NCBI RefSeq assembly: GCF_006345805.1
Contig: NC_043008.1
Location: 9,300,001-9,364,000, forward strand
DNA from: Octopus sinensis
Lineage: Eukaryota
Reading direction: 5' to 3'
DNA: 64,000 bases
Shown here: positions 3,396-54,330 of the stretch, piece after piece
Numbering within the stretch: the stretch's first letter is position 1
Layout: each line of letters opens with the position of its first letter
The notes under the pieces: generated by a model
What the model saw: the letters and a program-made list of their open reading frames with translations, nothing else
Databases searched by the model: none
What the model was told of the DNA's origin: nothing
Program-made: the position numbers and the translations under genes

Positions 3396-4828
3396 ATGAC
3401 TAAACCAGAACACACGCCTTTCCCATCGCCTGAAAGAGCTATATATGGATTTGCTCTCTATCTGGGATCTTTCATCTGTATTGGTGAGTCTACTTCCATT
3501 TTGCAAACAGGCTAATTGTCTGTTTCTTTACTAATTACAATCTGATTTCCAGTTTATTATTGTGTATATTGAGTATCAGACAAACTGTCTTGTGCTAGTT
3601 ACATTCCATTGCATTCTGGGTTCAAATCTTGATGAGATCATCTTTGTCTTGTTTGTTGTCATATCATAAAAAAAGGGTAAAAAGCCCCTTCAGCCATGAA
3701 TGACCATAAGATTGCCCCTAGAAAGTTACCCTCCGAGACATAGACACTTTCCTTCTCCTCCTATACAGTGGGGGATGTGTTCAGACACATAAACTGAAAG
3801 AGAGAGGGTGGAAGGAGGGAGGAAAAGAAAGGGTGAGAGAATGGGGGAGGGAGGTGAGGAAAGAGAAAGTGGTGAAGAGAGAGAGAGAGAGAGAACAAGA
3901 CAAACTTTAAAACATCTGATGTCAAATAAGTCAGCATCGACTCATCAGTGCCAAAACATCTCTTACACCAAAACGTTGATGTGTCACAAGTTTGCTGTGA
4001 TGAATGAAAGGCCGGTTCCCACTTTGTGTTGCACAGATATAAGCCCTGAATATATTTCCTCAAAGAAACCTTGTGTGGTCCCTTATACAATCTGTGTTTA
4101 TATATTTCTCTATTTTCAGTCCTTTACATCGGCTGGGCCTTTATTCCCGACAGTTACCTCCATTCTGCAGGATTAACGTATTATCCCCAAAAGTAAGTAC
4201 TGTTGATTGATTTTTATTTGTGTTCTTATAAGCAATGTCAGTTCCTGGTTAAAATGGCTCCCCTCACCTGAGACTCTGTTTCTACCTACAACCAGTCTTA
4301 GGCAAGTTATGTGTACATCACAACTTCCACTTTACATTGAAGATAGTAAAGCTTATCAAATGACACTGAATTTCTTACTCTTTCAACAAATACTTGTTTG
4401 CTGTGCTAATGTGTTTATCGCTTGAAGAATTGCACTGGTATGAAACTTGACACAAGAGACAAACTCTCAGTTTCATTTTCAATATATATATATACATATG
4501 CTGAGAACCCCTTCGGTCATGACTGACTGTGGCATTGCACCTAGAAAGTTACCCTCCCAGGCACAAGTCCGGGCAAGGTTGTTTATGGAAGACCAACAGT
4601 CGCCCATGCATACCAGCTTCCCCTCTCTTTGCCACCAGTGTTATCCAAGGGAAAGGCAGATACAGCTTGGCACCAGTGACATCGCAACTCATTTCTACAG
4701 CTGAGTGAACTGGAGCAACATGAAATAAAGTGTCTTGCTCAAGAACACAACATGCAGCCCGGTCCGGGATTCCAACTCACAACCGTAAGCTTGACGCTCT
4801 AACCACTGAGCCATGTGCCTTATATATA

Positions 4829-4859
<31 letters not shown>

Positions 4860-5182
4860 CATATATACATATATATATACATATGCATATATAATAATAA
4901 ATATTAGGGAATAAATCCAAATTTACAGGGAAAAAATCAGATTTAGGATTAAATCGATTTTATAGTAAAATATTATAAAATATTATAAAATATTATAAAA
5001 TATTATTAGAGACAAAACCACTATTTCCTTGTTTGTTTTGCAAAATAGTGGTTTTGTCTCTAATAATATTTTACATATGCATATATATATATGTATATAT
5101 ATGTATATATATGTATGTATATATATGTATATATATGTATGTATATATATGTATATATATGTATTATATATATATATATATG

Positions 5183-5235
<53 letters not shown>

Positions 5236-6209
5236 ATATTTCGGAATGGTCATATTGCCAGTTTAGCCAATAAATCTTGCACAACAAATATTTAAACGTT
5301 ATATATATATATATATATGGCTGTGTGGTAAGAAGCTTGCTTCCCGACCACATAATTCTGGGTTCAGTCCCAATCATTTATGAACTCCCAGTCCTGAGCT
5401 ATGGTTAATCATTTATGAAAATATCATTTTCGTCCATGATCAACTTTACGATTTTTTCTGATGAGATTGGAGGGTAATCAATCTTTTTCCTGCTCAACAG
5501 TTTTAGAAAAATAAATCTTAACGTATTACTGTTTCATGATGTATTTTTATTTTTCTTCTTTCAAGGTACTGGGCTGTTGCAATTCCTGCCTATATCATAA
5601 TGATCGTTCTTCTTGGCTATTTAGCATATTTTGCCTTTGTTTTTATAAGCACAGAAAACTTAGACTCCCTCAATACCATCACCGGTAAGAAATACTTCAT
5701 TAATACAAATAATTAATCAAGTCTTGTTTTGTCAAGTTTGTCTCCAGGGTGAAAGTTTCTGTAGTTTGTATGCTGTCATTAGTGTTGGACACTGATCAAA
5801 GCCCAGATCATCATCATCATTTAACATCTGCTTTCCATGCTGGCATGAGTTGGACGGTTTGACTGAGGACTGGCAGGCCAAGAGGCTGCACCAGTCTCCA
5901 ATCTGATCTGGCAAAGTTTCTACAGCTGGATGCCCTTCAAAGTCAACCACTCCGAGAGTGTAGTGGGTGTTTTTTTACGACCACACTCAAAAGGTGCATG
6001 GGATCCAGTCCAGCCGCACTGGCAATGACCATGCTTAAACGATGATTTTCACGTGCCGGTAGGCGACACTGGTAACAATCATGCTCGAATGGTGCTTTTC
6101 ATGTGTCACCAGCATGGGAGCCAATCTGTGGCCCTGGCAACGATCACGCTCGGATGTGCTTTCAACATTCCACTGGCATGAGTGCCAATACATATTGGCT
6201 TTTAACTCC

Positions 6210-6250
<41 letters not shown>

Positions 6251-6892
6251 CGTAAATATAAGAGAGTGACCACTATGTGGTCGACTCTAACACTAAAAAT
6301 AGATCCGCTACGGTTTCAACCACGAAGAATTGTTTCCGATGAAAGTTATCACAACTATTAGCATAAACGAACAGGGCAAATAAAAAATAACAAAAATGCA
6401 GATTAATTCTGGACAATTGTTTCGCTATTAATAAATTATGTAATTTTACTCACATAACATATCTGTAGCTCCTCAGCAGAATTTGTCTAGAGTACAATTT
6501 ACTCAACCGCATCTATTTTTAGTGCTAGAGTCGATCACATAGTGGTCACTCTCTTATATTTACGTATAAACTTTATTGTATTCCTGGTTTTTATGCACTA
6601 AGCCACTTGGTGTTAAATTGATGGTACTATTAAATTAGTATCCAATTTTCTCACCCTTATTAGTTGATTATATATATATATATTTATATTTATATACAGA
6701 ATGTTTTATTACAGACAATGATATTAAAAGGAAGCCTGCTTTACTTTCCTTTTCTTGTTTTCTTTTGCAGACAAATACGCTTTGTGCAAAAATGAAGAAA
6801 ATATTGTAGAGAATTCCATACCAAATATTTATGACTTAAGTGTTTCTGAAGTAACTAGAAAATATTATTTAAATGGAGAATCATTTAATTAA
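3396..6892 (+). CDS. PIGP: Phosphatidylinositol N-acetylglucosaminyltransferase subunit P (GPI-GnT subunit), 4 coding exons, 133 aa
   Basis: Exons 3396-3483, 4120-4192, 5566-5684, 6771-6892, all GT-AG with matching phases (402 nt). Translation [64 protein letters not shown]...[17 protein letters not shown]...[13 protein letters not shown] matches the PIG-P family (PERAIYGF, LTYxPQKYWAVAxP). An acceptor at 3375-3376 implies an unlocated upstream non-coding exon. Confidence 0.95.
4500..4820 (-). mobile_element. tRNA-derived SINE family C (further copies at 2750-2985, 3670-3740, 14770-14920, 46135-46480, 60275-60505)
   Basis: Head GGCTCAGTGGTTAGAGC..GTGAGTTGGAATCCCGGACCGGGCTGC followed by GTGTTCTTGAGCAAGACACTTTATTTCA..CCAGTTCACTCAGCTGTAGAAATGAGT. 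Confidence 0.8.
4885..5062. repeat. AT-rich dispersed repeat ending in a ~28-bp hairpin (relatives at 38680-39090 and 46530-46790)
   Basis: AATATTAGGGAATAAATCCAAA.TTACAGGGAAAAA shared between copies; ATTATTAGAGACAAAACCACTATTT...AAATAGTGGTTTTGTCTCTAATAAT fold-back. Confidence 0.55.
5810..6200 (-). mobile_element. RTE-tail SINE/LINE 3' end family D with (GAT)n tail (further copies at 12910-13245, 15105-15360, 21350-21850, 44060-44300, 48700-49080, 58410-58575)
   Basis: Shared TTTCTACAGCTGGATGCCCTTCCTAACGCCAACCAC and CATCATCATCGTTTAACGTCCGTTTTCCATGCT segments. Confidence 0.75.
6249..6566. mobile_element. ~315-bp element with ~55-bp terminal inverted repeats carrying the intact HHR (Penelope-like/retrozyme-like non-autonomous element)
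   Basis: TACGTAAATATAAGAGAGTGACCACTATGTGGTCGACTCTAACACTAAAAATAGAT at the left end and its near-perfect reverse complement at the right end; located in PIGP intron 3. Confidence 0.7.
6405..6483 (-). ncRNA. Type I hammerhead ribozyme motif, core intact
   Basis: Minus strand: AAUUCUG-CUGAGGA-GCUA(~38 nt)UAGC-GAAAC-AAUU-GUC-CAGAAUU. Shows a 7-bp stem I, the CUGANGA and GAAA core, a G-C closed stem II, a short stem III with palindrome ACAAUUGU and a GUC cleavage triplet. Confidence 0.85.
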
Positions 6893-7242: not shown

Positions 7243-7459
7243 TGTAAGGTGGCGAGCCGGGCGAAATGCTTAGCGGTATTTCGTCTGCCGTTACGTTCTG
7301 AGTTCAAATTCCGCCGAGGTCGACTTTGCCTTTCATCCTTTCGGGGTCGATTAAATAAGTACCAGTTACGCACTGGGGTCGATGTAATCGACTTAATCTG
7401 TTTGTCTGTCCTTGTTTGTCCCCTCTGTGTCTAGCCCCTTGTGGGCAATAAAGAAATAG
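7243..7459 (+). mobile_element. SINE family A inserted at the MITE end
   Basis: Full head to tail; 15-bp duplication GTAATGAAAGGGTTA at 7228-7242 and 7460-7474. Confidence 0.85.
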
Positions 7460-8433
7460 GTAATGAAAGGGTTAATTTAGTAAACCACAAGAGCAGTACA
7501 GTTAGCAAGTAACTGAAGAATGTGAGATTAGGAACAGTTTGTTCTTTAGATTCTGTGTCTAAATGCTAATAAATAAATTGTTGTTCATTCACTCTAAGGT
7601 AAATATAAGAAGCTTAGTAAGTTACTGGGAAGACATCAGTTCATTTTGCTAGTACAACCCTATAAAAATTACTTGAGTTACCAAAAGATGTTACTGTAAA
7701 GTTGAGGTGTCAAACAAACTGAATTGAATTTTTGATATTTCATTTAGCAAGACATGACCATTGAATAGTCTTGTTTTCTATAAATCTGGAACCTTTAATT
7801 AAATCTGAACTTGTTGGAGATTATCTCTTTTACTTGTTTCAGTCATTTGACTGTGGCCATTCTGGAGCACCGCCTTTTAGTCGAACAAATTGACCCCAGG
7901 ACTTATTCTTTGTCCACCACATCGCTTTCGCCAACCCTGAAGGGGAGCTGGGGCAATTGCTTCGTAGATGAATTCTCCTGGTTGACAATAGAGGGCATAA
8001 ACAAAGGCATTAGAAGTTCAGCTTCTTAAATAAGTATCAAGAATAGATTAAAGTTCATTCTGTTGATTACAATTATTGTTAAACTGATGAAAGACAAAAT
8101 CTGAAATCAGAAAGGTAAAACAATAAAAAACAAATTCATGCTTGAAGCCATCATGGCTGCATTAAATACAACAACAATATCATATTTTATTTGGGTTATT
8201 TACATCATCTTCTCTGGGAATGTTGAGAGGCCGTAAGTATTCTGGGTGATATTTTGATCTTTTGGTCAAATTGTCTTACATTTTGCTGGTTGGAGTACCA
8301 TGCCAGTTGGTCAGGCCATTCTAGTGTCAGAAAATAATCAGTCATTCAAGAATAGCAAAAAAGAACAATGACTGTTGACAGTTTCTGGTTTCATCAGAGA
8401 TTTTAGTTTTGTAGCTGAATGAAACACATGTCC

Positions 8434-11400
8434 TTACATTCCCATTCCTGCACGTTCTGATTGCTCAATACAAGCCTGAAGATTTGTTTCAAAAAGATTA
8501 CACCTGAAATAAATACAAATACATAGATTGAGACAAATGTTCATACAAAGTAACCATCTTCATAACACTGTAACAAAATTTTAACTTTTGGTGGGGCTTT
8601 GGTCATTAAGTGTGAGCAATCAGAGGAAACGACTACTATTCCCTTTAAATTTTGCTTTTATGACCTAATATCAATATTTTGAAACTGATCTATTTTCCAC
8701 TAGCAGTATTGCCTGGTGTTGCTCAGGTTTGTTTCAACCCTTTAGAATTGGAATTTTTGAAAAGTAAAAATTCTGCATTATGTAGCTTTTTATTCTCTTT
8801 AAGGGAACATTTTTTTGGTTGAAATACACCGAAAAATGGCGACACAGCAGTCAAAAAATCGTGAAAAAAAATAGGGATTTTCATAGAAAAAAAGTGCCTT
8901 TTTGATGTAAATAATTTTTGGTGTTAACATGGTCTGATTTGAATGTTTTCTTCTACGGAAGGAAGAGCAAGCCTTCTTCTATCATACTCTCAACTTGTGC
9001 CGCAGGGTCTCGGAGGAGATAGTGTTAGTTGAAGGCTACCAAATCTGCCACACATACAGACAACTTCAGCTTTATATATAGAGAGATTACATTTCAAACA
9101 GGCTCAGGACTGAATTGCTGAAGCAGAAATATCGTTACAGCAAATATTCTGCTCAGTACCACAGATTTGCTTGACTTTAACCACTTGAGCATGTCCCTTA
9201 GTGGCTGACAATATGTGCATCTCTGATCATGAGCAGGAATACTTGGGGAGCATCATAACCATGTGCTGAGAGGGATTCTTTGGGGTTTGAATAAATGGAA
9301 CAAAAGCAAAGTTTGAAGGAAATAGTAGCCATTTTTCATAGTTTCTAGGGGTCAGCTAAAAACAACAGTCGCTACCCAAGGACAAAAATCGTGTTGCATA
9401 GGGTGATAAAAACTTGTTGCATCAGCACAGACCATCAGTTTATATGGGAGGATATATGAAACTATCAGAATATACAGTGGCAAGCTGGCAGAAACGTTAG
9501 CATGCCGGGCGAAATTCTTAGTGGTATTTCGTCTGCCGCTACATTCTGAGTTCAAATTCTGCCGAGATCGACTTTGCTTTCCATCCTTTCGGGGTCAATT
9601 AAATAAGTACCAGTTAGGCACTGGGGTCGATGTAATCGACTTAATCCGTTTGTATGTCCTGGTTTGTCCCCTCTGTGTCTAGCCCCTGTGGGCAGTAAAG
9701 AAATACGAAACTATCAGAATATTACTGATACAGTTCTGCCATCAATCCCAAAGAATTGAAAAGCAATGTCGTCAATTCTAACAGAATTTGATATTTAGAT
9801 TTAAGGGGAGGCAAATAAGCATTGCAAACATTTCATTCGGTGATCAATTACACTTTTATTTTTTTTTTTTACATTTCTACTCAAAGGCTGTGGCCATGCT
9901 AGAGCACCAATTAATAATGGTTTCTTACATTGGTATATTCAATTGATAACTCTGTGCCACAGAGATACTCATCAAGCAGACATGGCAAAGACAATTTAAT
10001 GATTCAAGAAATACTTGGAAACCAAGGTTTAGATCACAACCTTCACATTGAATATATTTTCAAACAACTAAAACATCTTAATTGTATACCTATCAACATC
10101 ACCTTCATTTTCTATGTCTGGTTTTCTATGGCTGATTGAGTCAGATGGATCCTTTACTGTACGACAGGTCACCAAGTGTGGCTGTCTTTTGTCATTTTCC
10201 ATACGAAGTTACTTACAGGTTGAGCCGGCTTCTTCTCTGGTCCTAACAGCATCACAAACCATGGTGGCCCACGCTCGACGGTCACTGGAGACAGCGAGCC
10301 ATTCACGGTTCCATCTGCGCAGACCGACCACCAGCGGACTGCACAGATGGAACCGCGAATGGCTTCTTCTATGAATCCTACTACTACCATACGAAGTTCA
10401 ACATCATAAGATCTACTTCCGTCCTTGTCTTCCAATTCCTTCCACTTGGATCTTTTGGCATTTCTCTATCCATCTCTTATTATCCACACATATTACTTGT
10501 GTGCAACAATAGTCATCTCTCTTACACACAGCATCTGATTCCTCTTATGCCCAGTTTTTCTTCCAGCATATTTGTATCACATCACACTTCATCTCTCTCC
10601 AGCCTTGGCACACACAGCCACTGTGTTCATATTCAATATCCAGATATCACTACCATACAACATTAAAATTCACACACAGGCAATTTATGATCTACCCTTC
10701 ACTCAAAGAAAGAAATTCCTTGTTATCAGCAGATGTAAAACCTCCCTGAACTGTTTCCATCTTGTTCCTATCCTGGTTACTATGCTTTCAGAGCATTCTT
10801 CTTCTCCATGGCTGATTAGATTGCTCTCATTGCAAAAGCAATCAACGACGTCTAATGGAGCTTTCCAAGTATTGAAAAGAATTCTAGTGATGTTCTGTGC
10901 AGGAGGGCAGAAACTACAGGTAAGACCTGACTCAGACCAGAACCCATCCAACATATACCAGAATAAAAACATAGACACAATATGCTGCTGATTGGATAAG
11001 GAATCTGGAATTCGTTATTGGCAGAATCTAGTCAGAACCACAGATAACTTTTATAGAAAGTAGTTCTGTCGTTAACAGATGTATACCACAAACGAACTCA
11101 CTGTAGTAAAGATTGTTTGCCAACATAACATGGCAGTCCTGGTTTAGGACTAATGTTGCTGTAATTTAGCCCCAGGAGACATTGTCTCCAGTTTGGCTAT
11201 ACAAAACAATCTGTGTCCTTACATTTTCGAACAAAGGAACCTAGCACCCCCACCCAGCTCAAAACAATATCTGTGTATCGCGATTTCTGAATTATTTCCT
11301 TTCATCACCTAGATTGATTCCCATGTTCGAAAATACAAGGACGGATCGTGTCGTATAGCCAGCTGGAGACGATGTCTCCTGGGGCTAAATTACAGCAACA

Positions 11401-14400
11401 TTTGTCCTAAACCAGGACTGCCGTGTTATGTTGGCAAACAATCTTTACTATAAAGTACTGTTGATGAATATCTCATGTTGTGAGATTTAAAAATAGTAAT
11501 TTTCTAAACGAACTCATGTTAACGAGAACTTTTCCCCACAGAAAGTTTTGGAAGTGTTGCAGGTAATGTGATACCACTTATTTCTATGCTCAGTAGAGTC
11601 AACTTCATCTTTCATCTTCCCAAGGTTAGAAAGATAAGACTTGGTAATAAAGAAGAGACCATCTTCATTGAATTTACTAAACAACCTAACACTGAGAAAC
11701 ACCTCCATTGTGTCAAGAAAAACGACATCTCCCTCACCTGATTGGCATGTCCAACGAGTAAAATGGATTCTTTAAGGCGTAGTCAGAGTAAACTTCATAC
11801 ATTTTCCTAAGAAGCTGTTCCACAGCAATTTGTCGCAGATCCGTGAGTGCCAGAAACTTGAGGCCTGAAATAATAAACAAAAATACATTCAATAATTATA
11901 ACTAGAGTCCTCTTCTCAGTCACCAATCTCTTGTAGAGATGATGATGATAATAACAAAGGTGGATGCCTATCTATGGGCTCCATCTGTCTCTCATATCAG
12001 TGGCTCCCTGTTAGATCATGCTATTGTGGCATACATTGGATGAAGTAAGTTCAAATTCCGCCGATGTCGACTTTGACTTTCATCCTTTTGGGATTGATAA
12101 ATTAAGTACCAGTTGCGTACTGGAGTTGATCTAATCAACTAGCCCCCTCCCCCAAAATTTCAGGCCTAGTGCTTAGAGTAGAAAAGATTCTATTGACTTC
12201 CTATAAACTATATTTCTTTAAACTCTTGTTTCGGTCTTTCTAATTTCCAATCATTTTCAGTTGTCTTAGCTATATACATTTTCCACCAAAACAAAACTGG
12301 AGCTTCTGGGATCAAATCCAATCTAGAGGAATGTGTGTGTGTGTATGTTTAGGGACAAGGCAATTTAAAAATTTTAAATGACCGGATCAACTGGAAACTA
12401 GTCTTTAAGAGAGGAATATGAAAAACTAAGACCAATAAGTCTTGAACATTTAAATTAATAGGAACTGTTGGCTCTTTGACAAAAATGCAGAAAGTAAAAC
12501 TTGAACAAATCAATCAGTTTTTTGCCTTACCTGTCATACTTTGGAAACAATGTAATTTGAATGTGTCTGTCTCTATCAGGTCAATTCCAGAAGAACGTGG
12601 CTCAGGAGAAAGTTGGCAGCTGATGGTGTATAATCTACAGATAAATGATAAAATTGATTAAACAATGAAGCTATAAAACGGCTGTTCAACCTATTCACTG
12701 TAGAAATCTCAGGCAAACACAAGAGTTTCCCTGTGAAGAACCTCATTTTGTGATATAGGTCTTCTTGAGTAGGGGTGACTACAGATGCTGAATAATGAAA
12801 GATAATATACATCATCATTTAATGTCCAGCTTCCGAGCTGACATGGGTTGGGTGCTTCAACAGAATCTGAAAAGCTAGAGGACTGCACCAAACTTCACTG
12901 TCAACTTTATCATCATCATCATTTAACGTTCGTTTTTCATGCTGGCATGGGTTGGACGATTTGACTGAGATCTGGGAAGCCAGGAGGCTGCACCAGGCTC
13001 CAATCTGATCTGGCAATGTTTCTACAGCTGGATGCCCTTCCTAACGACAACCACTGTGAGAGTGTAGTGTGTGCTTTTTACATGCCACCAGCACAGGAGC
13101 CAATCAGGCGGGCCTGGTATATATCACGTTCAGAAAGTAATTATTACATGCCACCGGCATGGGAGCCAGTCAATGGGTACTGGCATTGGCCACATTTGGA
13201 TGGTACTTTTTACATGCTACTGGCAATGTCAAGTGGCATGCCAAATGAAGACAGATAAATTAAGTACCAGTTGCATACTGGGGTCGATCTAATTGACTGA
13301 CCTCCTCCCCCCAAATTATGGGCCTTGTGCCTAGCGTAGAAAATATTTCTACTTCAGAAACTCGTACTGTCTGAAATGTAATGGAAAATCACTGTTTTAA
13401 AACATTGATGTTCAGGTCAGAAAAGCAAAGGGTGAAGGGGATAGTAGTCATTTCCTTTGATTTCTAGATAGAAGAAGCAAAGAGGAAATAACACTTACTG
13501 ACCAAATACAAAAAAAAGATAAAAATTTTCTTACACAGTGTTCTCCATCAGTGATGGGTAAATCTGTGATGCAGAGGAAAATTTCCATTTCCTCAACTTC
13601 AAACACAGAAAACTGCAGCAAACACTGGATTGTGAATCCCTCAATAACAACAAATGCAATAAAAACAACATGGAGATGAAGGAATTCAACTTACGAGTGA
13701 AACATGCTGGCAAGCATAATTCTTTCGTTTGTCGTTAATTTTGGCCGACCAAATTTTATGTTGATTGGGTAATTTTCTTCACAGGCCAAAAGTTCCAGAA
13801 TGTCACGGCCATCCTTGAGATATCGACCTTCAGCCGTAATTCCATTAATACCAAGTACAGTATGTCCCACTGAACAGAGAGAAAAAAACTGAATTGTACA
13901 AAGAGCCATTTTATGGACAATAAAACAATAAGTCAAAAATATAAGGTAGACATTCTTCTTTTCTATGTCTGTGTGTCTTATCATCATCATTATTTCTCTT
14001 TATCACAAACTTTGTTGGAGCTCCTGGAGTCTTGCATTCATAGCAGGCTTGCTACCTGCATGCTACGGTACCATGCTATCCATTCTTTACAGTTATCTAA
14101 TACTTTCCTGATTATTCTGGCCGTGCCAAGGAGGCAAACCTTTTGTAACAGTTCTACTGGGCACTCCATTCTAATTTCCTTGATATTACCCTTGATGCTT
14201 TCTGATACTGTTCCCAAGGACCCAACAATAACTGGCACTATCTTCACCTTCATTTTCGATAGCCAAGTTATTTTGTACTTAAGAGGGTTCTATCTATCTT
14301 TTTGCCTTCCTTCTTGACTATTCGTCTGTCAAAGGGGCATGCAACATCAACTATATAGCACATGTGGTGCACCTTGTCCACCACCACTAGGTCTGGTCTG

Positions 14401-19958: not shown

Positions 19959-22900
19959 ATGGCGAAGTGCTTGTGTTTTGTGTCTCGTCTTCTTCTGTCG
20001 CCAAAATCTGTTTTTCCTATCCACCCGTCAGTTATTATTTCCAGTCGTGGTTATGCAAGGAAACAGCGATTACCACCAAACCCTCTTGAATTACCGACAG
20101 AAAAAGAGGAAATGACATTGATGGACCCCGACAACGACCTGGACGAGTGTTTTGATGATTATTATAACAGCCCCGACAACAAACTTCGGTCGAAATTTGA
20201 TATCAAAAAGTACGTATTGTGCATTTGATGTTCGGAAACTGCAGTAGTGTGTGTGTGTATGTGTGTGATACGTTTATTTGAAGGTGTATAAGCTTATGGT
20301 GGTTAATAGGATCTAGATATTAACCCTTAATAGTCGAGCCTGTGCTAATGGAGACCTCCGGCGCCCTTGACTAGCAGACCATATCGGGGATGGATTTCGG
20401 TATAAGTACTGCAAGTGGTAATAAATCTCTGAGCGAGTTATAAACAGTAGCTGCAACACATCATGACGTATATTTGCCATTTAAATATGGCTAACCCCTA
20501 AGGGTGGATGCTACTGTAGTTTGTAGCCCCAGGAGGACACCTCCTCCAGCTTGCTTTAGACACACTTTCTGTGCCCTATCGGTGTTTGCAAAGGCTTCCT
20601 TTTGCAAACACTGATAGGGGTTAGACATATTTAAATGGAAAATATACGTCATACTGGAAGTGGCTTTGTAAGAAAGTGGGTTTTTTTTTTATATATATAT
20701 GGGGGTTAGGGTTAGGGGTGGGAGAAAAGGGTTTCTGTTATCTTCATAAATGTAAACAAAGCCACTTACGGTACTTATACCGAAATTCATGCTAAAACAA
20801 CGGCCTTGACGCACAACACATGAACGAGGAAGCTTCTAGAGTGTCACTCAATCTGTTAGAAATAGCAGCTAAATTTCCTTCAATCGCAGTTTTCGTCCCC
20901 TTAAATAAGGAAGCGTACATTGGATACTCAACATGTGAAAACTGAAGATGGAATGGTGGAGTTCTGGTTTAGGCACCCCATGTAACCCCTCAGAACTTTT
21001 TTATGTTTTTTGAATTATCAGAAAAATTTTGCGAATTTGTGTTCTACACACGGGGATTTATACGATTATAGAATTTTTTAAAAAAAACAATTTAAAGTAT
21101 GGGCAGTTCGAAATTTTGGCTTAAATCCCAGCAATGGACTAGTAAATGTATGGGGAGAAAAATATTGAAAAACGTCAATTCATGTCAGAGTGACCAAGAA
21201 ATGAGGAAGGTATCAAGTGGTCGTGAGATGTGCTAAAAATAACAGCCAAATAACCCTTAAATCACACAAAATATTTATTCTTTTATATTTGTTTTTGTTC
21301 AAAGCCACTTCCTTCCAATATCACTCCTCCCCTCTTAAGGGATCTCTTGTCTTACAAATTACTTGACCTTGACAGTGCTGTTGCCACATAGAACCCATCC
21401 AATCCATTCTGTAATGTGATTGGTGTTTGGAAGGGCATCCAACGTGTAAAATCCATACCAAAACAGACTTTGCCAGTGCTGGTGCCACAGAAAGCATGCA
21501 GGTTATTCTGTAAAGTGGTTAGCATTAGGAAGGAACCCAGCTGTAAAAACTATACCAAAACGGACCTTGGAAGTAGAATGAAAAGAGCTGTTGTTGTGTA
21601 ACCCCAGGTCAGCTCTGATATGAATATTCCGTCAAGCAAGTCAAGCGACCTTGTACAGGGTCCATTGCTGGTGCCATATAAAAAACATGCAGTCCACTCT
21701 GTAACGGGGTTGACATTAGGAAGGGCATCCAGCTGTGAAAACCATGCCAAAACAGAAAGTGGGGCTAGGTACAGTCTTCTGGCTTACCAGCTCCTGTTAT
21801 GCTGTCCAACCCATACCAGAGCATGGAAGATGGGCCTTAAATGATGATGAATACTTCCAGAACACAATGATAAATAAAGTATGAAGTCAAGACATTATTG
21901 GAAGTAAATACTGTAGAGCTTATATATTGGTGTAGGAGTGTCTGTGTGGTAAGTAGCTTGCTTACCAGCCACATGGTTCCAGGTTCAGTCCCACTGCGTG
22001 GCACCTTGGGCAAGTGTCTTCTACTATAGCGTCGGGCCGACCAAAGCCTTGTGAGTGGATTTGATAGATGGAAACTGAAAGAAGCCTGTCGTATGTATAT
22101 ATATATATATGTGTGTGTGTTTGTGTATATGTTTGTGTCTGTGTTTGTTCCACCAACATCGCTTGACAACCGATGCTGGTGTGTTTACGTCCCCATAACT
22201 TAGCAGTTCGGCATAAGAGACCGATAGAATAAGCACTAGGCTTACAAAGAATAAGTTCTGGGGTTGATTTGCTTGACTAAAAAGGCGGTGCTCCAGCATG
22301 GCCACAGTCAAATGACTGAAACAAGTAAAAGAGTGTATGAAACTGTAAAAATGGAATCTTATTTGAGAAATTAAAAATTTTTTCTTTGTCTTACTTGCAG
22401 GATAATTAATCAGGAGAAGAAGAAGGTAAAACTAAAGATCTTAGAACGCAAATACTTCAAGACTCCCCAAGAAGCAAACTTCCTAACATGGAGGGCGAAA
22501 GAACAAATTCGTTTCTTAAATGCCGAATATCCTGAAGAATGGACACTTGAAAGACTGTCTCAGAGCTTTCCTATTAGCAAAACTGGTTTAATTAAATTGC
22601 TGTCTTCTACTTATGTGATGGATTCTGAGAAAATTTTAAAACATGATTCCAATGTAAAAAAGAGGTGGAAAAAGCTGAATGCAGAACTGTCCTTAAATGA
22701 AAGGGTCGTTAGTCCTGAATTCAAACATTTGATAGAATCAGGTAAATTGGAATTACTGAAAAATGCCGGAGGTTTAATGGAAGCTCCCAAATTGCCTTCT
22801 GAAATGCATAATGTATCAACGAAAAATTCTGAAAAGAAAATGGGTAGATTTGAAAGTATTTTACAAAATTATGAAAGATTTTCTGAAAAGCAAAACTATA

Positions 22901-23502
22901 TTTGTAATACTAGCAACAAACAAGATTTGGTTAAGCTGATGCCAGAAGAGCAAGATACAGGTGCCAAGATACCTATTGAAGAGTATAACGAGTCAAAGCT
23001 AGATTGGTCGTCTATTGATTATGAAATTAAAGAAACTGATGTCCGAGCAAGAAATTCTCATTTAGAACCTTCAGAAAACCTTGCTAATCAAATTACAGAA
23101 GAATACCTGAAAAATGCTCCAAGAAAAATACGGAGAAAAATAAAGAGTGGCGATATTAGTTTGTCTGATCTGACTTACTTGGAGGCTTATCAGTTAATTG
23201 GCACCGAAAAGGTAAAGGATATCGAAACATCATCACAGACCAAAACTAATTACGAAAATGAACAACATTCAGAACACAACAGGGATTCACTGTTGGAGGA
23301 ATTACTCTCTAAGTCAACATCCAGTGCTATACCTGTTGCAGGTAGTCACGAGAGAATGCCTGATTTTTCTGGTTTTACTGTTGATGATTTTGTAAATATA
23401 CCTGAACATGTTAAAGGATCAAAGGGAACCGTATACAAAAAGGATAATGCATATTATGATGAGTATGGGGAGTTTTTATACAAAGTGCCAATTAGCGAAT
23501 AA
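19959..23502 (+). CDS. NGRN: Neugrin (mitochondrial ribosome assembly factor, Rrg9/NGRN family), 2 exons, 450 aa
   Basis: Exon 1 19959-20209 (donor GTACGT), exon 2 22401-23502 (acceptor ttgcAG), phase 2. Contains LTWRAKEQIRFLNAEYPEEWTLERLSQSFPIS (neugrin domain) and C-terminal YYDEYGEFLYKVP, similar to the vertebrate FFDxxGNFLYRI end. The N-terminus is Arg/Ser/Leu-rich, like a mitochondrial presequence. Confidence 0.88.
21932..22335 (+). mobile_element. tRNA-derived SINE family B with CORE-like segment (further copies at 24500-24935, 25060-25433, 33575-33980, 48440-48680, 53430-53585, 58765-59225, 60650-61368)
   Basis: GGAGTGGCTGTGTGGTAAGTAGCTTGC..GGGTTCAGTCCCACTGCGTGGCACCTTGGGCAAGTG..(TA/TG)n..GACTGAAACAAGTAAAAGAG. 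Confidence 0.85.
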
Positions 23503-28457: not shown

Positions 28458-29610
28458 TTGGGCCATCCCATAAATAATGCAGTTTTTTTTTTATTGCATG
28501 AAGTAAAATTTGGAGGGGGAGAAGATAAACTACTAGCATCAGCTTCCAATAAAAGCAGGTAGTAATTTCACCCTCTCCTTATTCTTAGTGCAAGTTTTGA
28601 AGAGTGCAGTTCGATTTTAACAATTATTTTTTTCCAAGCTATAATGGAAGTGACAAAGGAGCATATTCGACATGTTTTGCATTATGCGTTCAATAATGAC
28701 AACAACACAATGGAAACTGTGTGGAACATTAATACCGTATATGGGGATTGGACAATAAGCGTAAGCCAGTGTAATGGGTGGTTCCGGAAATCCTGAACCG
28801 GAAACTTACAGCCTAGAAGAGGAGCTGCGTCCTGGATAGAGCTCATTGAGGATGTCCTGCAAACCCTGCTTGAACAAAACCCCATTGTAACTGTTGAGGA
28901 ACTAGCAAAGCATCTTGGATTTGGTCATTCAACCATACATCAACACCTGCATGCCACCAGAAAAGTCAGCAAATTGGGTCAATGGGTCCCTCACAAACTT
29001 TCCCAGTCAAATCGCATTTGGAGAGTGAATGTGTGCTCTTCCTTGCTGTCATGTCTCACGAATGAACCTTTCTTTGACCTAATAATGACTGGTGGCAAGA
29101 AATGGGTTCTCTATAAAAATGTCAAGTGCCGCAAACAGCAGGTAGGGAAAGGAGAAACACTGGTACCCACCTGGCTAAAAATGGTCGTCACCCACATAAG
29201 GTGTTGATATTTGTCTGGTGGAATATGAAAGGTTTAGTCCACTTTGAACTTTTAAACTCAAGCCAAATAATAACAAAGGAGATCTACTATGAGCAGCTTG
29301 AGCGGTTTGAGACATTGCTAGAAAAAAACCGACCACCTTTGGTTTCAATACGAAAGGTTTTCTTCTATCAGGATAATATTCGGCCACATACAGTGAGGAT
29401 GAGATTCCAAAGGCTGGAGCAATTTGAATGGGAAACGATGCCCCACTCACCATATTCGCCAGACATTGCCCCATCTTATTATCATTTATTCTGCTGCCTT
29501 CAAAACCATTTGGAACGAAACAATAGGAATTCTCCAGACAAGATCAGAACAGTACTGATATTTTTCATCATGGACCAGTGAATTTTGGAAGAGGGGCCTT
29601 GCAATTATTT
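28458..29610 (+). mobile_element. Mariner (DD34D) transposon, inactivated, right end missing
   Basis: TA|TTGGGCCATCCCATAAATAATGC left terminus; ATG at 28644 MEVTKEHIRH..; WVPHKL, TGGKKW, QDNIRPH and YSPDIAPSYYHLF motifs with stops and frameshifts. Confidence 0.92.
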
Positions 29611-39327: not shown

Positions 39328-40352
39328 AATGAATGCATGAACTATGATCTACTCAATGTCCATGGATACAACACATTGTACTGTTATCATCCAAGGAATA
39401 CCATGATTGTAAGAAGCATGTGACTAGTGGAAATGCACATACCAATGCATTAATGTGCTAGTAAATTCCATCCATAGAATATTAAGACAAAGAGCACGAT
39501 TCGATAGCAAGATATTTTATTAGTTGAACGATATTTCAACAGTACGTCTGTCTTTGTTAAGTTCAAAATAAGAAGCGATAAAAGATATTTTGAATTTGAC
39601 AAAGACAGACGTACTGTTGAAATATCGTCCAACTAATAAAATATGTTACAATCGAATCACGCTCTTTTGTCTTGACTGTTTACCTTTGTGAAGAGTTACA
39701 TCAATCTTTTTAAAAATATTATTATTATTATCATTATTATTATTACTATATTTATCTCATGTTATATCCATACAGCTTGGTGCAGCCCCCCCCTCCCCCA
39801 ATAATTGCAGCATTTTGCCCCATCACTAAGTTCTGAGTTCAAATTCTGCTGAGGTTGACTTTACCATTCATCCTTGAGATAAATATAGTAATAATAATAA
39901 ATATAGTAATAATAATAAATATAGATAAATATAGTAATAATAATAATGATAATAATAATAATATTTTTAAAAAGATTGATGTAACTCTTCACAAAGGTAA
40001 ACAGTCAAGACAAAAGAGCGTGATTCGATTGTAACATATTTTATTAGTTGGACGATATTTCAACAGTACGTCTGTCTTTGTCAAATTCAAAATATCTTTT
40101 ATCGCTTCTTATTTTGAACTTAACAAAGACAGACGTACTGTTGAAATATCGTTCAACTAATAAAATATCTTGCTATCGAATCGTGCTCTTTGTCTTAATA
40201 TTCTATGGATGGAATTTACTAGTACATTAATGCATTGGTATGTGCATTTCCACTAGTCACATGCTTCTTACAATCATGGTATTCCTTGGATGATAACAGT
40301 ACAATGTGTTGTATCCATGGACATTGAGTAGATCATAGTTCATGCATTCATT
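39328..40352. repeat. ~430-bp inverted duplication containing a nested ~190-bp MITE-like hairpin
   Basis: 39328-39758 is the reverse complement of ~39876/39924-40352; the ORF track shows near-identical 60-aa ORFs on both arms. Confidence 0.9.
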
Positions 40353-52325: not shown

Positions 52326-52589
52326 CAGCTTCATCAATGTACTAAATTAGCAAACGAGGATTTATAACGAGTGATAAAAAGAAAATTGATAATTCATTAA
52401 TGAAGATAAAATTAGCCACACCAGATACTTGAGTTATTATCTTTTAATGTTTTTATTTAACAACTAAATTAGAGTTTTGAAAAAAAACAGGATTGTGTTA
52501 TACAAACTGTTCTATATTTTTTTGAGAAATGAGGAATTTTGTGCATTATTTACATTGGACAGATTTGTGTCCTCATCTTGTTTCTTGTT

Positions 52590-52635
52590 ACCACAACATT
52601 TCGGCTAATTTACTCTCCAGCCTTCATCAGGTGTC
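52590..52635 (-). ncRNA. Decayed copy of the same minimal hammerhead motif
   Basis: Reverse-complement copy of 53041-53086 with ACGU changed to AUGU (CpG decay) and CAGCC changed to UAGCC. Confidence 0.5.
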
Positions 52636-52693
52636 CTGGTAGAATTTTGAACCCAACCCTGGGTTCTCGTTCCTAAGGTATTTTTTTTGCTGA

Positions 52694-52742
<49 letters not shown>

Positions 52743-52925
52743 TATTTATTATTATTTATTATTATTTATTTAAGGCACTGCCTGGAATTGAACTCGCAAT
52801 CTTGGGTTAGTAGCTCTTAGGCATATAACATAATGGTTAAGAGTGCAGGCTGCTAACCCCAAGATTCTGAGTTCAATTCCAGGCAGTGCCTTGAATAAAT
52901 AATAACAAGAATAATAACAAAAATC

Positions 52926-52974
<49 letters not shown>

Positions 52975-53040
52975 TAATAATATCAGCAAAAAGAATACCT
53001 TAGGAATGAGAACCTAGTGTTGGGTTCAAAATTTTACCAG

Positions 53041-53086
53041 GACACCTGATGAAGGCTGGAGAGTAAATCAGCCGAAACGTTGTGGT
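53041..53086 (+). ncRNA. Minimal (dimer-type) hammerhead ribozyme motif
   Basis: GACAC-CUGAUGA-A-GGCUG-gagaguaaau-CAGCC-GAA-ACGU-U-GUGGU. Stem III is reduced to the palindrome ACGU, stem I is CAC/GUG, and cleavage would follow GUU. Confidence 0.65.
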
Positions 53087-53831
53087 AACAACAAACAAGA
53101 TGACACAAATCTATCCAATGTAAATAATGTAAATAGTGTTATATATATATATTTGTATGTCTGTGCATTATTGTGCATGAGTGTGTATGCATGTATAAGC
53201 ATATGTTTGGGTGATTGTATATATATTAATGGGTGTGTATGTGTATCTGTATGTATTTATGTTTGTGTGTATGCACTCATGAGTGTATGTATGTATATGT
53301 GTATATGTATGTCTATTGGTTTCACATTTTAGCACAAAGCCAGCAATTTCGAGGTTGGGATTGAGGGAGGGATTACATCAACCCCAGTACTCAACTGGTA
53401 CTTTTTTTACCAACTCCAACACACAACAGCCTTCTTTCTGTTTTCATCTACTAAATCCACTCACAAGGCTTTGCTTGGCCCGAGGTTATAGTAAAAGAAA
53501 CTTGCCCAAGGTTCCACACAGTGGAACTGAACCCAGAACCATGTGACTGGAAAACAAGCTTCTTACCACACAGCCACACCTGTACCTATGTATGTATATC
53601 ATTCTGTTTGAAAGTGTATAAAGATTTAGCAGCTGAGATTTTTGTTTAAACTACACACCTGCATATATAAAATACGCATAAAGCTACAAGACCCCCACAT
53701 ATCAATAGCTCTTTGTTGCCAAATAGAAAGAAGCTTTTGCACCATGCAACTGCTCGTCACAACTCTAATTTGCATAACGAATATGCTATATATGGTAACT
53801 CTTCGATTAAAAAGATAATGAATGATAAAAA

Positions 53832-54330
53832 GTGAAGTATATTTGCCACTTAAATGTGGCTAACCACTAAGGGTGGATGCTACTGTATCTTGTAGCCCCA
53901 GGAGAACATCTTCTCCAGCTGGCTATTGACACACTTTCTGTGCCCTATCGGTATTTGCAAAGGGAAGCCATCCTTCCCATCATCGACCTGATGTGATATA
54001 CATGGACCCGGGTTTCTGGGTATTTACCCATCGTCAGTGCACGACAATCACCGGTCTTCGATGCGAAGGGGTCCCAATGCAAATACATATATCCTTTTTC
54101 AGTGACGAAAAGTCACTGATCATGCACTGACGATGGGTAAATATTCAGAAACCCAGGTCCGTGCGTACCACATCAAGTCGATGATGGGAAGGATGGCTTC
54201 CCTTTGCAAATACTGATAGGGCACAGAAAGTGTATCAATAGCCAGCTGGAGAAGATGTTCTCCTGGGGCTACAAGCTACAGTAGCATCCACCCTTAATGG
54301 TTAGCCACATTTAATTGGCAAATATACTTC
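53832..54330. mobile_element. ~500-bp fold-back element (~210-bp arms) with HHR-like cores; partial relative at 20420-20660
   Basis: GTGAAGTATATTTGCCACTTAAATGTGGCTAACC... and ...GGTTAGCCACATTTAATTGGCAAATATACTTCAC. Confidence 0.85.
54001..54159. ncRNA. Pair of inverted hammerhead-like cores
   Basis: Minus 54001-54041: CUGACGA-UGGGU-aaau-ACCCA-GAAAC-CCGG-GUC. Plus 54127-54159: CUGACGA-UGGGUaaauAUUCA-GAAAC-CCAG-GUC. Stem I pairs only with a 2-nt offset, so activity is uncertain. Confidence 0.5.

What the first reader, a model, noticed from the sequence alone, without database searches (positions are those of the whole stretch)
6405..6483. Intact hammerhead ribozyme antisense in PIGP intron 3 and on the TRAPPC4 strand downstream of that gene
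Seen: every conserved core nucleotide (CUGAGGA, G10.1-C11.1, GAAA, A15.1-U16.1, C17), a perfect 7-bp stem I and a palindromic short stem III (ACAAUUGU), with predicted cleavage between 6412 and 6411. Known: such HHRs mark Penelope-like elements and retrozymes, and short-stem-III forms often cleave as dimers. Inference: it lies about 1.7 kb past a candidate TRAPPC4 poly(A) signal (minus-strand AATAAA at 8186-8191), so it could cut TRAPPC4 read-through RNA entering the convergent PIGP gene, acting as a co-transcriptional terminator.
Basis: partly seen in the sequence, partly recalled or inferred. Interest (0 to 1): 0.8.

Follow-up and report, generated by a model that had tools for sequence, protein, structure and literature searches.

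The report
Transposon-borne hammerhead ribozyme in octopus intron
A complete hammerhead ribozyme motif really is there, but it is carried by a young 421-bp mobile-element insertion that Octopus sinensis and O. vulgaris have and O. bimaculoides lacks, so it is most likely ordinary transposon cargo and not a terminator for the neighbouring gene.

Summary
On the minus strand, 6483..6405 carries every conserved hammerhead core base, a 7-bp helix I, a G-C-closed helix II and the palindrome ACAAUUGU as helix III. The predicted cut lies between 6412 and 6411. It scores 34.7 bits on Rfam Hammerhead_1 (gathering 34), but only when about 300 nt are searched. Larger scans miss it, probably because the loop of helix II holds 38 nt where the family consensus has six.

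The window is Octopus sinensis CM016870.1.

The new finding is that the motif sits in a ~421-bp insertion (6248-6668) lying in a (TA)n microsatellite. The insertion has 60-nt inverted arms and a 100-nt tail on one side only. O. vulgaris has it with an identical ribozyme. O. bimaculoides has an empty (TA)n site but the same convergent gene pair.

This layout fits a truncated insertion made by Penelope-like retroelement machinery. A MITE is the main rival.

Folding predicts a poor monomer (helix III p~0.01) and a classic double-hammerhead dimer.

The terminator idea has no support. Verdict: a new member of a known kind, of low to moderate interest.

The parts
6405..6483 (-). Type I hammerhead ribozyme motif; predicted cleavage 3' of C17 (6412), between 6412 and 6411
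   Evidence: Sequence read. Rfam RF00163 34.7 bits, E=2.9e-7. Only descriptor hit in all accessible sequence. None as good in 400 simulated windows.
6477..6483 (-). Helix I, 5' strand (AAUUCUG); pairs with 6405-6411 (CAGAAUU), 7 perfect base pairs
   Evidence: pair probabilities 0.53-0.99 in the isolated 79-mer.
6470..6476 (-). Core box C3 U4 G5 A6 G7 G8 A9 (CUGAGGA)
6424..6469 (-). Helix II: GCUA/UAGC (G10.1-C11.1 closing pair) enclosing a 38-nt imperfect hairpin where the family consensus has a 6-nt loop
   Evidence: helix II pair probabilities 0.98-1.0. cmscan models part of it as a 34-nt insertion, the probable reason larger scans miss the motif.
6412..6423 (-). G12 A13 A14, then helix III ACAAUUGU (2 bp plus AAUU tetraloop as a monomer, or an 8-bp intermolecular duplex in a dimer), then C17
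   Evidence: Monomer helix III p~0.01; the homodimer MFE is the double hammerhead.
6248..6307 (.). Left inverted arm. In the retroelement reading, this is the 3' end of the sense copy that carries the ribozyme (sense on the minus strand).
   Evidence: 60 nt, 95% complementary to 6508-6567.
6508..6567 (.). Right inverted arm. In the retroelement reading, this is a second, strongly 5'-truncated copy whose sense strand is the plus strand.
   Evidence: One of the three arm differences (6535) arose only in O. sinensis.
6308..6404 (-). 97-nt unique spacer between the ribozyme and the left arm. In the full-element fold it competes for pairing with the ribozyme's helix I and core.
6484..6507 (-). 24 nt between the right arm and the 5' end of the ribozyme (the head-to-head junction in the retroelement reading)
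6568..6668 (+). One-sided ~100-nt extension ('tail') outside the right arm. It is part of the same insertion.
   Evidence: Absent together with the arms from O. bimaculoides. No match elsewhere in the window or the loci.
6213..6247 (.). Left (TA)n flank of the insertion (target microsatellite)
   Evidence: O. bimaculoides has a single (TA)n at L002 ~13684-13700.
6669..6696 (.). Right (TA)n-like flank of the insertion
5685..6770 (+). PIGP intron 3, which hosts the insertion. The ribozyme is antisense to PIGP.
   Evidence: Exon mapping. PIGP identified. CDS range taken from the L001 annotation (window = L001 minus 6605).
8434..8503 (-). Last coding exon of TRAPPC4 (stop codon 8436-8434)
8186..8191 (-). 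First minus-strand AATAAA after the TRAPPC4 stop codon (candidate poly(A) signal)

Best explanation
The motif is a genuine type I hammerhead ribozyme sequence. It arrived as cargo of a ~421-bp mobile-element insertion (6248-6668) in a (TA)n microsatellite in PIGP intron 3. The insertion happened in the common ancestor of O. sinensis and O. vulgaris, after the split from O. bimaculoides.

The most likely vehicle is Penelope-like-element (PLE) machinery. The inserted RNA would be either the 3' end of a PLE or a retrozyme-like non-autonomous RNA derived from one. In this reading, both target strands primed reverse transcription. That produced two head-to-head, 5'-truncated copies whose 3' ends point outward into the microsatellite. 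One copy is 260 nt, has its sense on the minus strand and carries the ribozyme. The other copy is 60 nt plus a 100-nt tail and has its sense on the plus strand.

In its parent element, the ribozyme would process multimeric or tandem transcripts by pairing two copies through the palindromic helix III (a double hammerhead). Here it is a single copy, antisense to its host gene. It is probably a weak or inactive self-cleaver with no host function.

Shown here: the motif, the insertion with its empty site, the inverted arms, the tail, the (TA)n target, and the in-silico preference for a dimer.
Inferred: the PLE-type mechanism, the direction of the event (insertion, not deletion), and the lack of function.
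For: Motif.

Insertion and empty site: O. vulgaris has the whole 421 bp at 99.3% identity, with an identical ribozyme. O. bimaculoides has one (TA)n where O. sinensis has (TA)n-insert-(TA)n.

Age: the arms differ at 3 of 60 positions, and by only 2 of 60 in the sinensis/vulgaris ancestor. Introns of O. sinensis and O. bimaculoides differ by about 8-12%. This argues for a young insertion over an old element that O. bimaculoides lost.

Architecture compared with published PLE hallmarks:
- (TA)n is a preferred target, an inverted 5'-truncated copy often adjoins the main copy, a tail occurs at one end only, and the hammerhead lies near the 3' end (PMC8557442).
- A PLE protein cuts and extends both DNA strands, and the tail corresponds to the sequence between two reverse-transcription start sites (PMC11167929).
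- Most PLE hammerheads occur as single motifs in truncated copies, or as pairs on opposite strands (PMC4209133).
- Invertebrate type I hammerheads have a 2-bp helix III capped by a tetraloop (PMC7229834).
- Retrozyme monomers are dispersed across chromosomes, with about 43% in introns (2026 preprint).
- O. vulgaris has recently active Penelope-like families (PMC13282606).

Dimer preference and poor monomer or in-context folding.

A second outward-facing inverted pair, with PLE-style minimal hammerhead-like motifs and one end in (TA)n, lies at 52573-53103 in the same window.
Against: - No reverse transcriptase or GIY-YIG coding sequence lies next to the insertion or anywhere in the accessible DNA.
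- No second copy of the 421 bp was found in the window or in the three other loci, so neither family membership nor homology to a PLE terminus could be shown.
- The tail is ~100 nt, against the 30-40 nt usually reported.
[quoted passage not shown] This motif does not.
- A 60-nt inverted repeat ending in TACGTA can also be read as MITE terminal repeats with a TA duplication.
- Direction of the event rests on arm similarity alone. There is no alignable outgroup, because the Argonauta intron does not align.
- Cleavage activity and transcription are untested.
Confidence: 0.6

Rival explanations
1. The 320-bp unit 6248-6567 is a MITE or foldback DNA transposon with 60-nt terminal inverted repeats and a TA target duplication. 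The hammerhead lies in its internal region, so this would be a ribozyme carried by a class II element.
For: - The arms are 60 nt and 95% complementary.
- The termini read TA|CGTAAAT...ATTTACG|TA inside a TA-rich target.
- Tc1/mariner remnants are present in the window (Pfam Transposase_1 at 29126-29581).
- Recently active Tc1-mariner and MITE families are reported in O. vulgaris (PMC13282606).
Against: - The segment missing from O. bimaculoides is not bounded by the arms. It runs ~100 nt beyond the right arm to 6668, so a second event would be needed.
- TACGTA is itself a palindrome, so a TA duplication cannot be told apart from arm sequence.
- No other copy sharing the arms was found.
- Hammerheads are not known in class II elements, whereas the retroelement reading explains the outward-facing 3' ends, the tail and the (TA)n target.
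Confidence: 0.17
2. One reading: the ribozyme has been co-opted to cut TRAPPC4 read-through RNA as it enters the convergent PIGP gene, giving a co-transcriptional entry point for termination.
For: The strand and position are right. It lies on the TRAPPC4 strand, 1703 nt past the first AATAAA and 1951 nt past the stop codon, inside the convergent gene. The catalytic core is intact.
Against: - It is absent from O. bimaculoides, and no hammerhead is found at the Argonauta locus, although both have the same convergent gene pair.
- It is a single copy whose predicted active form is a dimer.
- Helix I has p~0.05 in the context of the whole element.
- Seven poly(A) hexamers lie upstream of it on that strand.
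- There is no excess conservation.
- An antisense orientation inside an intron is the ordinary outcome for a transposon that survives in a gene.
Confidence: 0.04
3. The motif arose by chance in AT-rich transposon sequence, has no hammerhead ancestry and is not catalytic.
For: - Extrapolating from the simulation, roughly 0.5 motifs of this quality are expected per 2.7-Gb genome under my permissive descriptor.
- The score is only 0.7 bits above the Rfam gathering threshold.
- The 38-nt loop 2 and the absence of a defined loop 1 are unusual for a type I hammerhead.
- No family of related hammerheads could be retrieved.
Against: - The expectation for this window alone is about 1e-5.
- By my scaling of the E-value, the single-family expectation is about 6e-4 per genome.
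- The motif sits in an insertion whose layout matches the one element class known to carry exactly this hammerhead type.
- Features that my descriptor did not require are also present: helix III is a perfect 8-nt palindrome, and loop 2 starts with CA and has AAUA near its 3' end, which cmscan aligns to the consensus loop CAAAUA.
Confidence: 0.08
4. The element is old, and O. bimaculoides lost it by recombination or slippage between the two flanking (TA)n tracts. The ribozyme would then not be specific to the sinensis/vulgaris lineage. This concerns only the direction of the event and is compatible with either the retroelement or the MITE reading.
For: The insertion is flanked by direct (TA)n repeats, which can mediate a precise deletion. 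No alignable outgroup is available.
Against: The arms were 58/60 identical in the sinensis/vulgaris ancestor. This is less divergence than the ~8-12% between O. sinensis and O. bimaculoides in the same region. However, 60 nt gives a wide error, and gene conversion between the arms is possible.
Confidence: 0.15

Closest known systems
Hammerhead ribozymes of Penelope-like elements (Cervera & de la Pena 2014, PMC4209133; Craig et al. 2021, PMC8557442)
   Same: Type I topology; G10.1-C11.1 pair; short palindromic helix III that favours a dimer; mostly solitary motifs in truncated copies; inverted copies on opposite strands; (TA)n targets; a one-sided tail; ribozyme near the 3' end of the element.
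   Different: No RT/GIY-YIG ORF or pseudo-LTR is present here. [quoted passage not shown] Helix I is a full 7 bp and helix III has 2 bp plus a tetraloop, so the motif is 'canonical' and not 'minimal'. Loop 2 holds 38 nt. The tail is about 100 nt, not 30-40.
Metazoan non-LTR retrozymes (Cervera & de la Pena 2020, PMC7229834; Li et al. 2026 preprint, 10.64898/2026.07.22.740005)
   Same: AT-rich, non-coding, a few hundred nt long, with a type I hammerhead whose helix III is 2 bp plus a tetraloop as in invertebrates. Dispersed monomer copies exist, many of them in introns. They are thought to derive from PLE terminal regions.
   Different: Retrozymes are defined by tandem repeats that yield circular RNAs. 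Here there is one ribozyme and no tandem unit. Inverted arms are not a described retrozyme feature.
Double-hammerhead satellites (newt satellite 2; Forster et al. 1988, as cited in PMC4209133)
   Same: Weak helix III; the predicted active form is a domain-swapped dimer with an extended intermolecular helix III.
   Different: Those occur as tandem arrays, so two ribozymes lie on one transcript. This is a lone copy.
Conserved intronic hammerheads of amniotes (HH9, HH10; de la Pena & Garcia-Robles 2010; from my own knowledge and the reference list seen)
   Same: A hammerhead inside an intron of a protein-coding gene.
   Different: Those lie in the sense orientation, are conserved over hundreds of millions of years, and are stable monomers. 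This one is antisense, lineage-specific and transposon-borne.
Co-transcriptional cleavage elements downstream of poly(A) sites (from my own knowledge)
   Different: No evidence of transcription, cleavage or conservation. A sister species with the same gene layout lacks it.

Membership tests
Hammerhead ribozyme, type I (Rfam RF00163) | Conserved core: C3 U4 G5 A6 N7 G8 A9, G12 A13 A14, A15.1-U16.1, H17 | tested here: met
   All present: CUGAGGA, GAA, A-U, C17.
Hammerhead ribozyme, type I (Rfam RF00163) | Three helices around the core, with helix I open-ended | tested here: met
   Helix I has 7 bp. Helix II has 4 bp with a G-C closing pair, followed by an extension. Helix III has 2 bp plus a tetraloop, or forms an 8-bp palindrome.
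Hammerhead ribozyme, type I (Rfam RF00163) | Covariance-model score at or above the curated gathering threshold | tested here: met
   34.7 bits against 34, full-length match. It is found only when ~300 nt are searched and is lost in scans of 2.7 kb and 64 kb.
Hammerhead ribozyme, type I (Rfam RF00163) | Loop 1 / loop 2 tertiary contacts needed for fast cleavage at cellular Mg2+ | tested here: inconclusive
   Loop 2 starts with CA and has AAUA near its 3' end, which cmscan aligns to the consensus loop, but it holds 38 nt in all. No defined loop 1 lies beyond the 7-bp helix I.
Hammerhead ribozyme, type I (Rfam RF00163) | Site-specific self-cleavage | not testable with these tools
   Needs in vitro transcription and a cleavage assay.
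Penelope-like element (PLE) insertion | RT plus GIY-YIG ORF flanked by pseudo-LTRs | tested here: not met
   The insertion is 421 bp with no ORF longer than 58 codons. No GIY-YIG motif occurs in any accessible sequence. At most it is a truncated or non-autonomous copy.
Penelope-like element (PLE) insertion | Insertion signature: inverted 5'-truncated copies, one-sided tail, microsatellite (TA)n target | tested here: met
   compared with the description in PMC8557442 and PMC11167929. The tail is longer than typical.
Penelope-like element (PLE) insertion | Sequence homology of the insertion to the terminus of an autonomous PLE in the same genome | not testable with these tools
   No octopus whole-genome or Repbase/Dfam search is on hand. 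Indirect attempts failed.
Metazoan non-LTR retrozyme | Tandem repeats of a ~170-400-nt unit, each with a hammerhead | tested here: not met
   A single ribozyme and no tandem unit. The 9-nt repeat GAAACAATT downstream is not significant.
MITE (class II non-autonomous element) | Terminal inverted repeats | tested here: met
   60 nt, 95% complementary.
MITE (class II non-autonomous element) | Target-site duplication directly flanking the repeats, and an empty site that restores one copy of it | tested here: inconclusive
   A TA duplication is possible but cannot be separated from the palindromic TACGTA termini. The segment absent from O. bimaculoides extends ~100 nt beyond the right repeat.
MITE (class II non-autonomous element) | Multi-copy family sharing the terminal repeats | not testable with these tools
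   No other copy in ~135 kb of octopod sequence.
Ribozyme-type co-transcriptional terminator of TRAPPC4 | Present wherever the convergent gene arrangement it is meant to serve is present | tested here: not met
   O. bimaculoides and Argonauta hians have the PIGP/TRAPPC4 convergent pair but no hammerhead.
Ribozyme-type co-transcriptional terminator of TRAPPC4 | Transcribed on the ribozyme strand and cleaved in vivo | not testable with these tools
   No RNA-seq access.

The most novel reading that the evidence does not exclude
The hammerhead is carried by a true terminal-inverted-repeat DNA element (a MITE), which would be the first link between hammerhead ribozymes and class II transposons. Alternatively, the young insertion has already been co-opted, so that read-through or antisense RNA between the convergent TRAPPC4 and PIGP genes is cut at 6412/6411 in O. 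sinensis and O. vulgaris but not in O. bimaculoides.
Probability: 0.1. Interest if true: 0.55.

Novelty: new member of a known kind. Interest (0 to 1): 0.25.

Why it matters
Hammerheads carried by Penelope-like elements and retrozymes are common in invertebrates. I found no published record of one in an octopus genome, and this one would escape routine Rfam annotation. Genome surveys that rely on default Infernal filters may therefore undercount hammerheads with an enlarged loop 2.

The locus also offers a natural presence/absence pair. O. sinensis and O. vulgaris carry the ribozyme-bearing insertion between two convergent housekeeping genes, and O. bimaculoides has the empty site. A comparison of stranded RNA-seq could directly test whether a solitary transposon hammerhead has any effect on host transcripts.

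Otherwise the finding is ordinary transposon cargo, and the terminator story should not be carried forward without RNA evidence.

Tried and rejected
(1) Whole-window Rfam scans, in gathering and E-value modes, did not report the hammerhead, and neither did a 2.7-kb scan. For the same reason, the negative Rfam scans of the O. bimaculoides and Argonauta regions exclude only compact hammerheads. My descriptor scan is the usable negative result.

(2) Attempts to retrieve other copies of the element all failed:
- A protein search with the 58-codon frame 6449-6276 found no word-sharing candidate.
- The exhaustive representative search gave two weak hits to long proteins, which I did not inspect and take to be unrelated.
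- A metagenome scan with the arm core found nothing.
- A metagenome scan with the 3' half of the ribozyme gave five hits with no CUGANGA box upstream, which I take to be chance matches.

(3) I looked for PLE coding remnants. ORFs of 130 aa or more yielded only a mariner transposase fragment among the ten scanned. A GIY-YIG regular expression over six-frame translations of all loci found nothing. I prepared a six-frame Pfam scan but did not submit it, because no second copy of the element exists in the window.

(4) A possible degenerate second ribozyme 88 nt downstream (shared GAAACAATT) was rejected (shuffle p=0.12).

(5) I tested for conservation between O. sinensis and O. vulgaris. There were 3 substitutions in 421 nt of the insert and 0 in the 79-nt ribozyme, against 39 in 2032 nt of the flanks. 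This is marginal for the insert and uninformative for the ribozyme.

(6) Other core-like strings were checked. 54013-54037 and 54127-54151 have U10.1-A11.1 and are arms of a foldback element. Rfam gives no hammerhead hit for them or for the 52.6/53.0-kb pair.

(7) I made an alignment for a custom covariance model but did not build the model, because a model made from the query itself would add nothing beyond the descriptor scan.

(8) The supplement of the O. vulgaris repeat paper holds no consensus library.

Full report
1. THE OBSERVATION

The minus strand from 6483 to 6405 reads AAUUCUG CUGAGGA GCUA-(38 nt)-UAGC GAA ACAAUUGU C CAGAAUU. Every conserved hammerhead position is present:
- C3-A9 at 6476-6470.
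- G10.1 at 6469, paired with C11.1 at 6424.
- G12-A14 at 6423-6421.
- A15.1 at 6420, paired with U16.1 at 6413.
- C17 at 6412.

Helix I is a perfect 7-bp duplex (6483-6477 with 6411-6405).

Rfam's Hammerhead_1 model matches the site end to end at 34.7 bits (gathering score 34), with E=2.9e-7, when only 6300-6600 is searched. The hit disappears when 2.7 kb or the whole window is searched. cmscan places a 34-nt insertion in loop 2, and this probably defeats the speed filters. Routine annotation would miss this ribozyme.

A descriptor of my own, relaxed to helix I >=4 bp, helix II >=3 bp and helix III >=1 bp, finds this site and nothing else. It was run on both strands of the window and of the orthologous loci of three other octopods. 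In 400 simulated 64-kb windows with the same dinucleotide statistics it hit once, and never at the observed quality. Chance is therefore negligible for this window. My extrapolation of about 0.5 such motifs per 2.7-Gb genome means that chance is not negligible for a genome-wide screen.

2. WHERE IT IS

The window is 100% identical to Octopus sinensis CM016870.1, and window position x corresponds to L001 position x+6605.
- PIGP is on the plus strand, CDS 3396-6892. Its third intron spans 5685-6770.
- TRAPPC4 (Pfam Sybindin) is on the minus strand, CDS 16395-8434, with its last coding exon at 8503-8434.

The motif is therefore antisense in PIGP intron 3, on the TRAPPC4 strand. It lies 1703 nt past the first minus-strand AATAAA (8191-8186).

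The ribozyme lies inside a small mobile-element insertion.
- It is flanked by 60-nt inverted arms, 6248-6307 and 6508-6567, which are 95% complementary.
- O. vulgaris has the same structure, with an identical ribozyme.
- O. bimaculoides lacks everything from about 6248 to 6668. Where O. sinensis has (TA)n-insert-(TA)n, it has a single (TA)n.
- The missing segment is larger than the arm-bounded unit. It also includes about 100 nt outside the right arm (6568-6668).
- One of the three differences between the arms arose only in O. sinensis, so the arms were 58/60 identical in the sinensis/vulgaris ancestor.
- The surrounding introns of O. sinensis and O. bimaculoides differ by roughly 8-12%. This favours an insertion after the split from O. 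bimaculoides, which a recent repeat study puts at 13-33 million years ago (PMC13282606), over a deletion in O. bimaculoides. With only 60 nt and no alignable outgroup, this remains an inference.

4. WHAT KIND OF ELEMENT

Read on the ribozyme's strand, the layout has five features:
- A 260-nt sense copy (24 nt, ribozyme, 97 nt, 60-nt end) whose 3' end abuts (TA)n.
- A second copy joined head to head with it. It consists only of the same 60-nt end plus a 100-nt extension, and its 3' end abuts the other (TA)n.
- Both 3' ends face outward.
- The copies are 5'-truncated.
- The target is a (TA)n microsatellite, and a tail is present at one end only.

This is the published signature of Penelope-like element (PLE) insertions. 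Those elements carry their hammerhead near the 3' end (Craig et al. 2021). It also fits the finding that a PLE protein cuts and extends both target strands and starts reverse transcription at two internal sites, with the tail being the sequence between them.

Cervera and de la Pena described most PLE hammerheads as solitary motifs in truncated copies, sometimes as pairs 100-700 bp apart on opposite strands. Animal retrozymes carry the same class of ribozyme and are now argued to derive from PLE termini. They also occur as dispersed monomers, about 43% of them in introns. O. vulgaris has recently active Penelope-like families.

I therefore read the insertion as a product of PLE machinery: either a PLE 3' fragment or a retrozyme-like passenger RNA.

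The weaknesses of this reading are real:
- No RT or GIY-YIG coding sequence is anywhere near.
- The tail is longer than the usual 30-40 nt.
- I could not retrieve a single further copy of the family.

The main rival is a MITE with 60-nt terminal repeats and a TA duplication. That reading does not explain the 100-nt tail that went missing together with the rest.

5. HOW IT WOULD WORK, AND WHETHER IT DOES HERE

As an isolated 79-mer, helices I and II form with high probability. Helix III (2 bp plus an AAUU tetraloop) has probability about 0.01, and the minimum-energy fold pairs core bases instead.

Two copies cofold into the classic double hammerhead. It has an 8-bp intermolecular helix III and swapped helix I strands, at -44.4 kcal/mol against 2 x -19.3 for two monomers. 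This is the mode expected for ribozymes that process tandem or multimeric transposon transcripts.

At this locus there is one copy, so a dimer needs two separate transcripts. In the context of the full element, the 60-bp arm duplex dominates the fold (-150.5 kcal/mol) and helix I falls to about 0.05. Co-transcriptional folding could still allow a short window of activity. All of this is prediction, and cleavage is untested.

6. THE TERMINATOR HYPOTHESIS

Nothing supports it beyond position and strand.
- O. bimaculoides and Argonauta hians keep the same convergent PIGP/TRAPPC4 pair without any hammerhead.
- Seven poly(A) hexamers precede the ribozyme on the minus strand.
- Zero substitutions in 79 nt between O. 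sinensis and O. vulgaris is expected by chance about one time in five at the local rate of 1.9%.
- An antisense orientation inside an intron is what is expected of a transposon that survives in a gene.

Transcription on the minus strand could not be examined.

7. COMPARISON AND NOVELTY

The motif is a member of the type I hammerhead family by sequence, structure and model score. Catalysis and tertiary contacts are untested.
- It works like the hammerheads of PLEs and retrozymes.
- It cannot be filed as a retrozyme, because the tandem-repeat criterion is not met.
- It can be filed as PLE-derived only on architectural grounds.

I found no paper reporting hammerheads in octopus genomes. This is a new member of a known kind, of low to moderate interest. 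Its practical value is twofold: it is an example of a hammerhead that default Rfam scans miss, and it offers a natural presence/absence pair for testing whether a solitary transposon ribozyme affects host RNAs.

Noticed in passing
window 52573-52766 and 52910-53103: A second outward-facing inverted pair: 194-nt arms, 91% complementary, around an (ATT)n tract and a hairpin. Each arm carries a PLE-style 'minimal hammerhead'-like string. On the plus strand, starting at 53046, it reads CUGAUGA-A-GGCUG...CAGCC-GAA-ACGU-U, with the extra base after A9, a G10.1-C11.1 pair and a palindromic ACGU, but a weak helix I. The right end abuts (TA)n. Rfam does not call these motifs.
   Followed up: partly
window 6248-6307 / 6508-6567: The 60-bp near-perfect inverted repeat would form a long duplex in PIGP pre-mRNA about 200 nt upstream of the 3' splice site of intron 3. 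In a heavily RNA-editing animal this is a plausible ADAR substrate. Not tested.
   Followed up: no
window 6300-6600 compared with the whole window: The hammerhead passes the Rfam gathering score only when ~300 nt are scanned. It is lost in scans of 2.7 kb and 64 kb, probably to the speed filters. Hammerheads with a large loop 2 may be systematically under-annotated.
   Followed up: yes
window 7256-7439 and 9504-9687: Two copies, 93% identical, of a ~184-nt SINE-like repeat. One lies in the PIGP-TRAPPC4 intergenic region and the other in the last TRAPPC4 intron. Similar sequences recur in the translated frames of the window.
   Followed up: no
window 29126-29581 (+): A mariner-type transposase fragment (Pfam Transposase_1, E=4e-14). 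Further mariner-like DDE fragments are visible in the six-frame translation.
   Followed up: no
window 39525-39631 and 40049-40155: Two identical ~107-nt hairpins in inverted orientation about 420 nt apart. They score 54.6 bits on mir-6095, well below its gathering score of 100. They are probably the terminal repeats of another foldback element or MITE, not microRNA genes.
   Followed up: no
window 53940-54230: Another foldback with long inverted arms. Its CUGACGA...GAAA strings have U10.1-A11.1 and are not hammerheads. Rfam reports only hairpin-like microRNA matches below threshold.
   Followed up: partly
window 22597-23502 (+): The longest ORF in the window (301 aa) has no Pfam match. The wider stop-to-stop frame is rich in charged residues. 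Possibly an exon of an unannotated gene or a transposon ORF.
   Followed up: no
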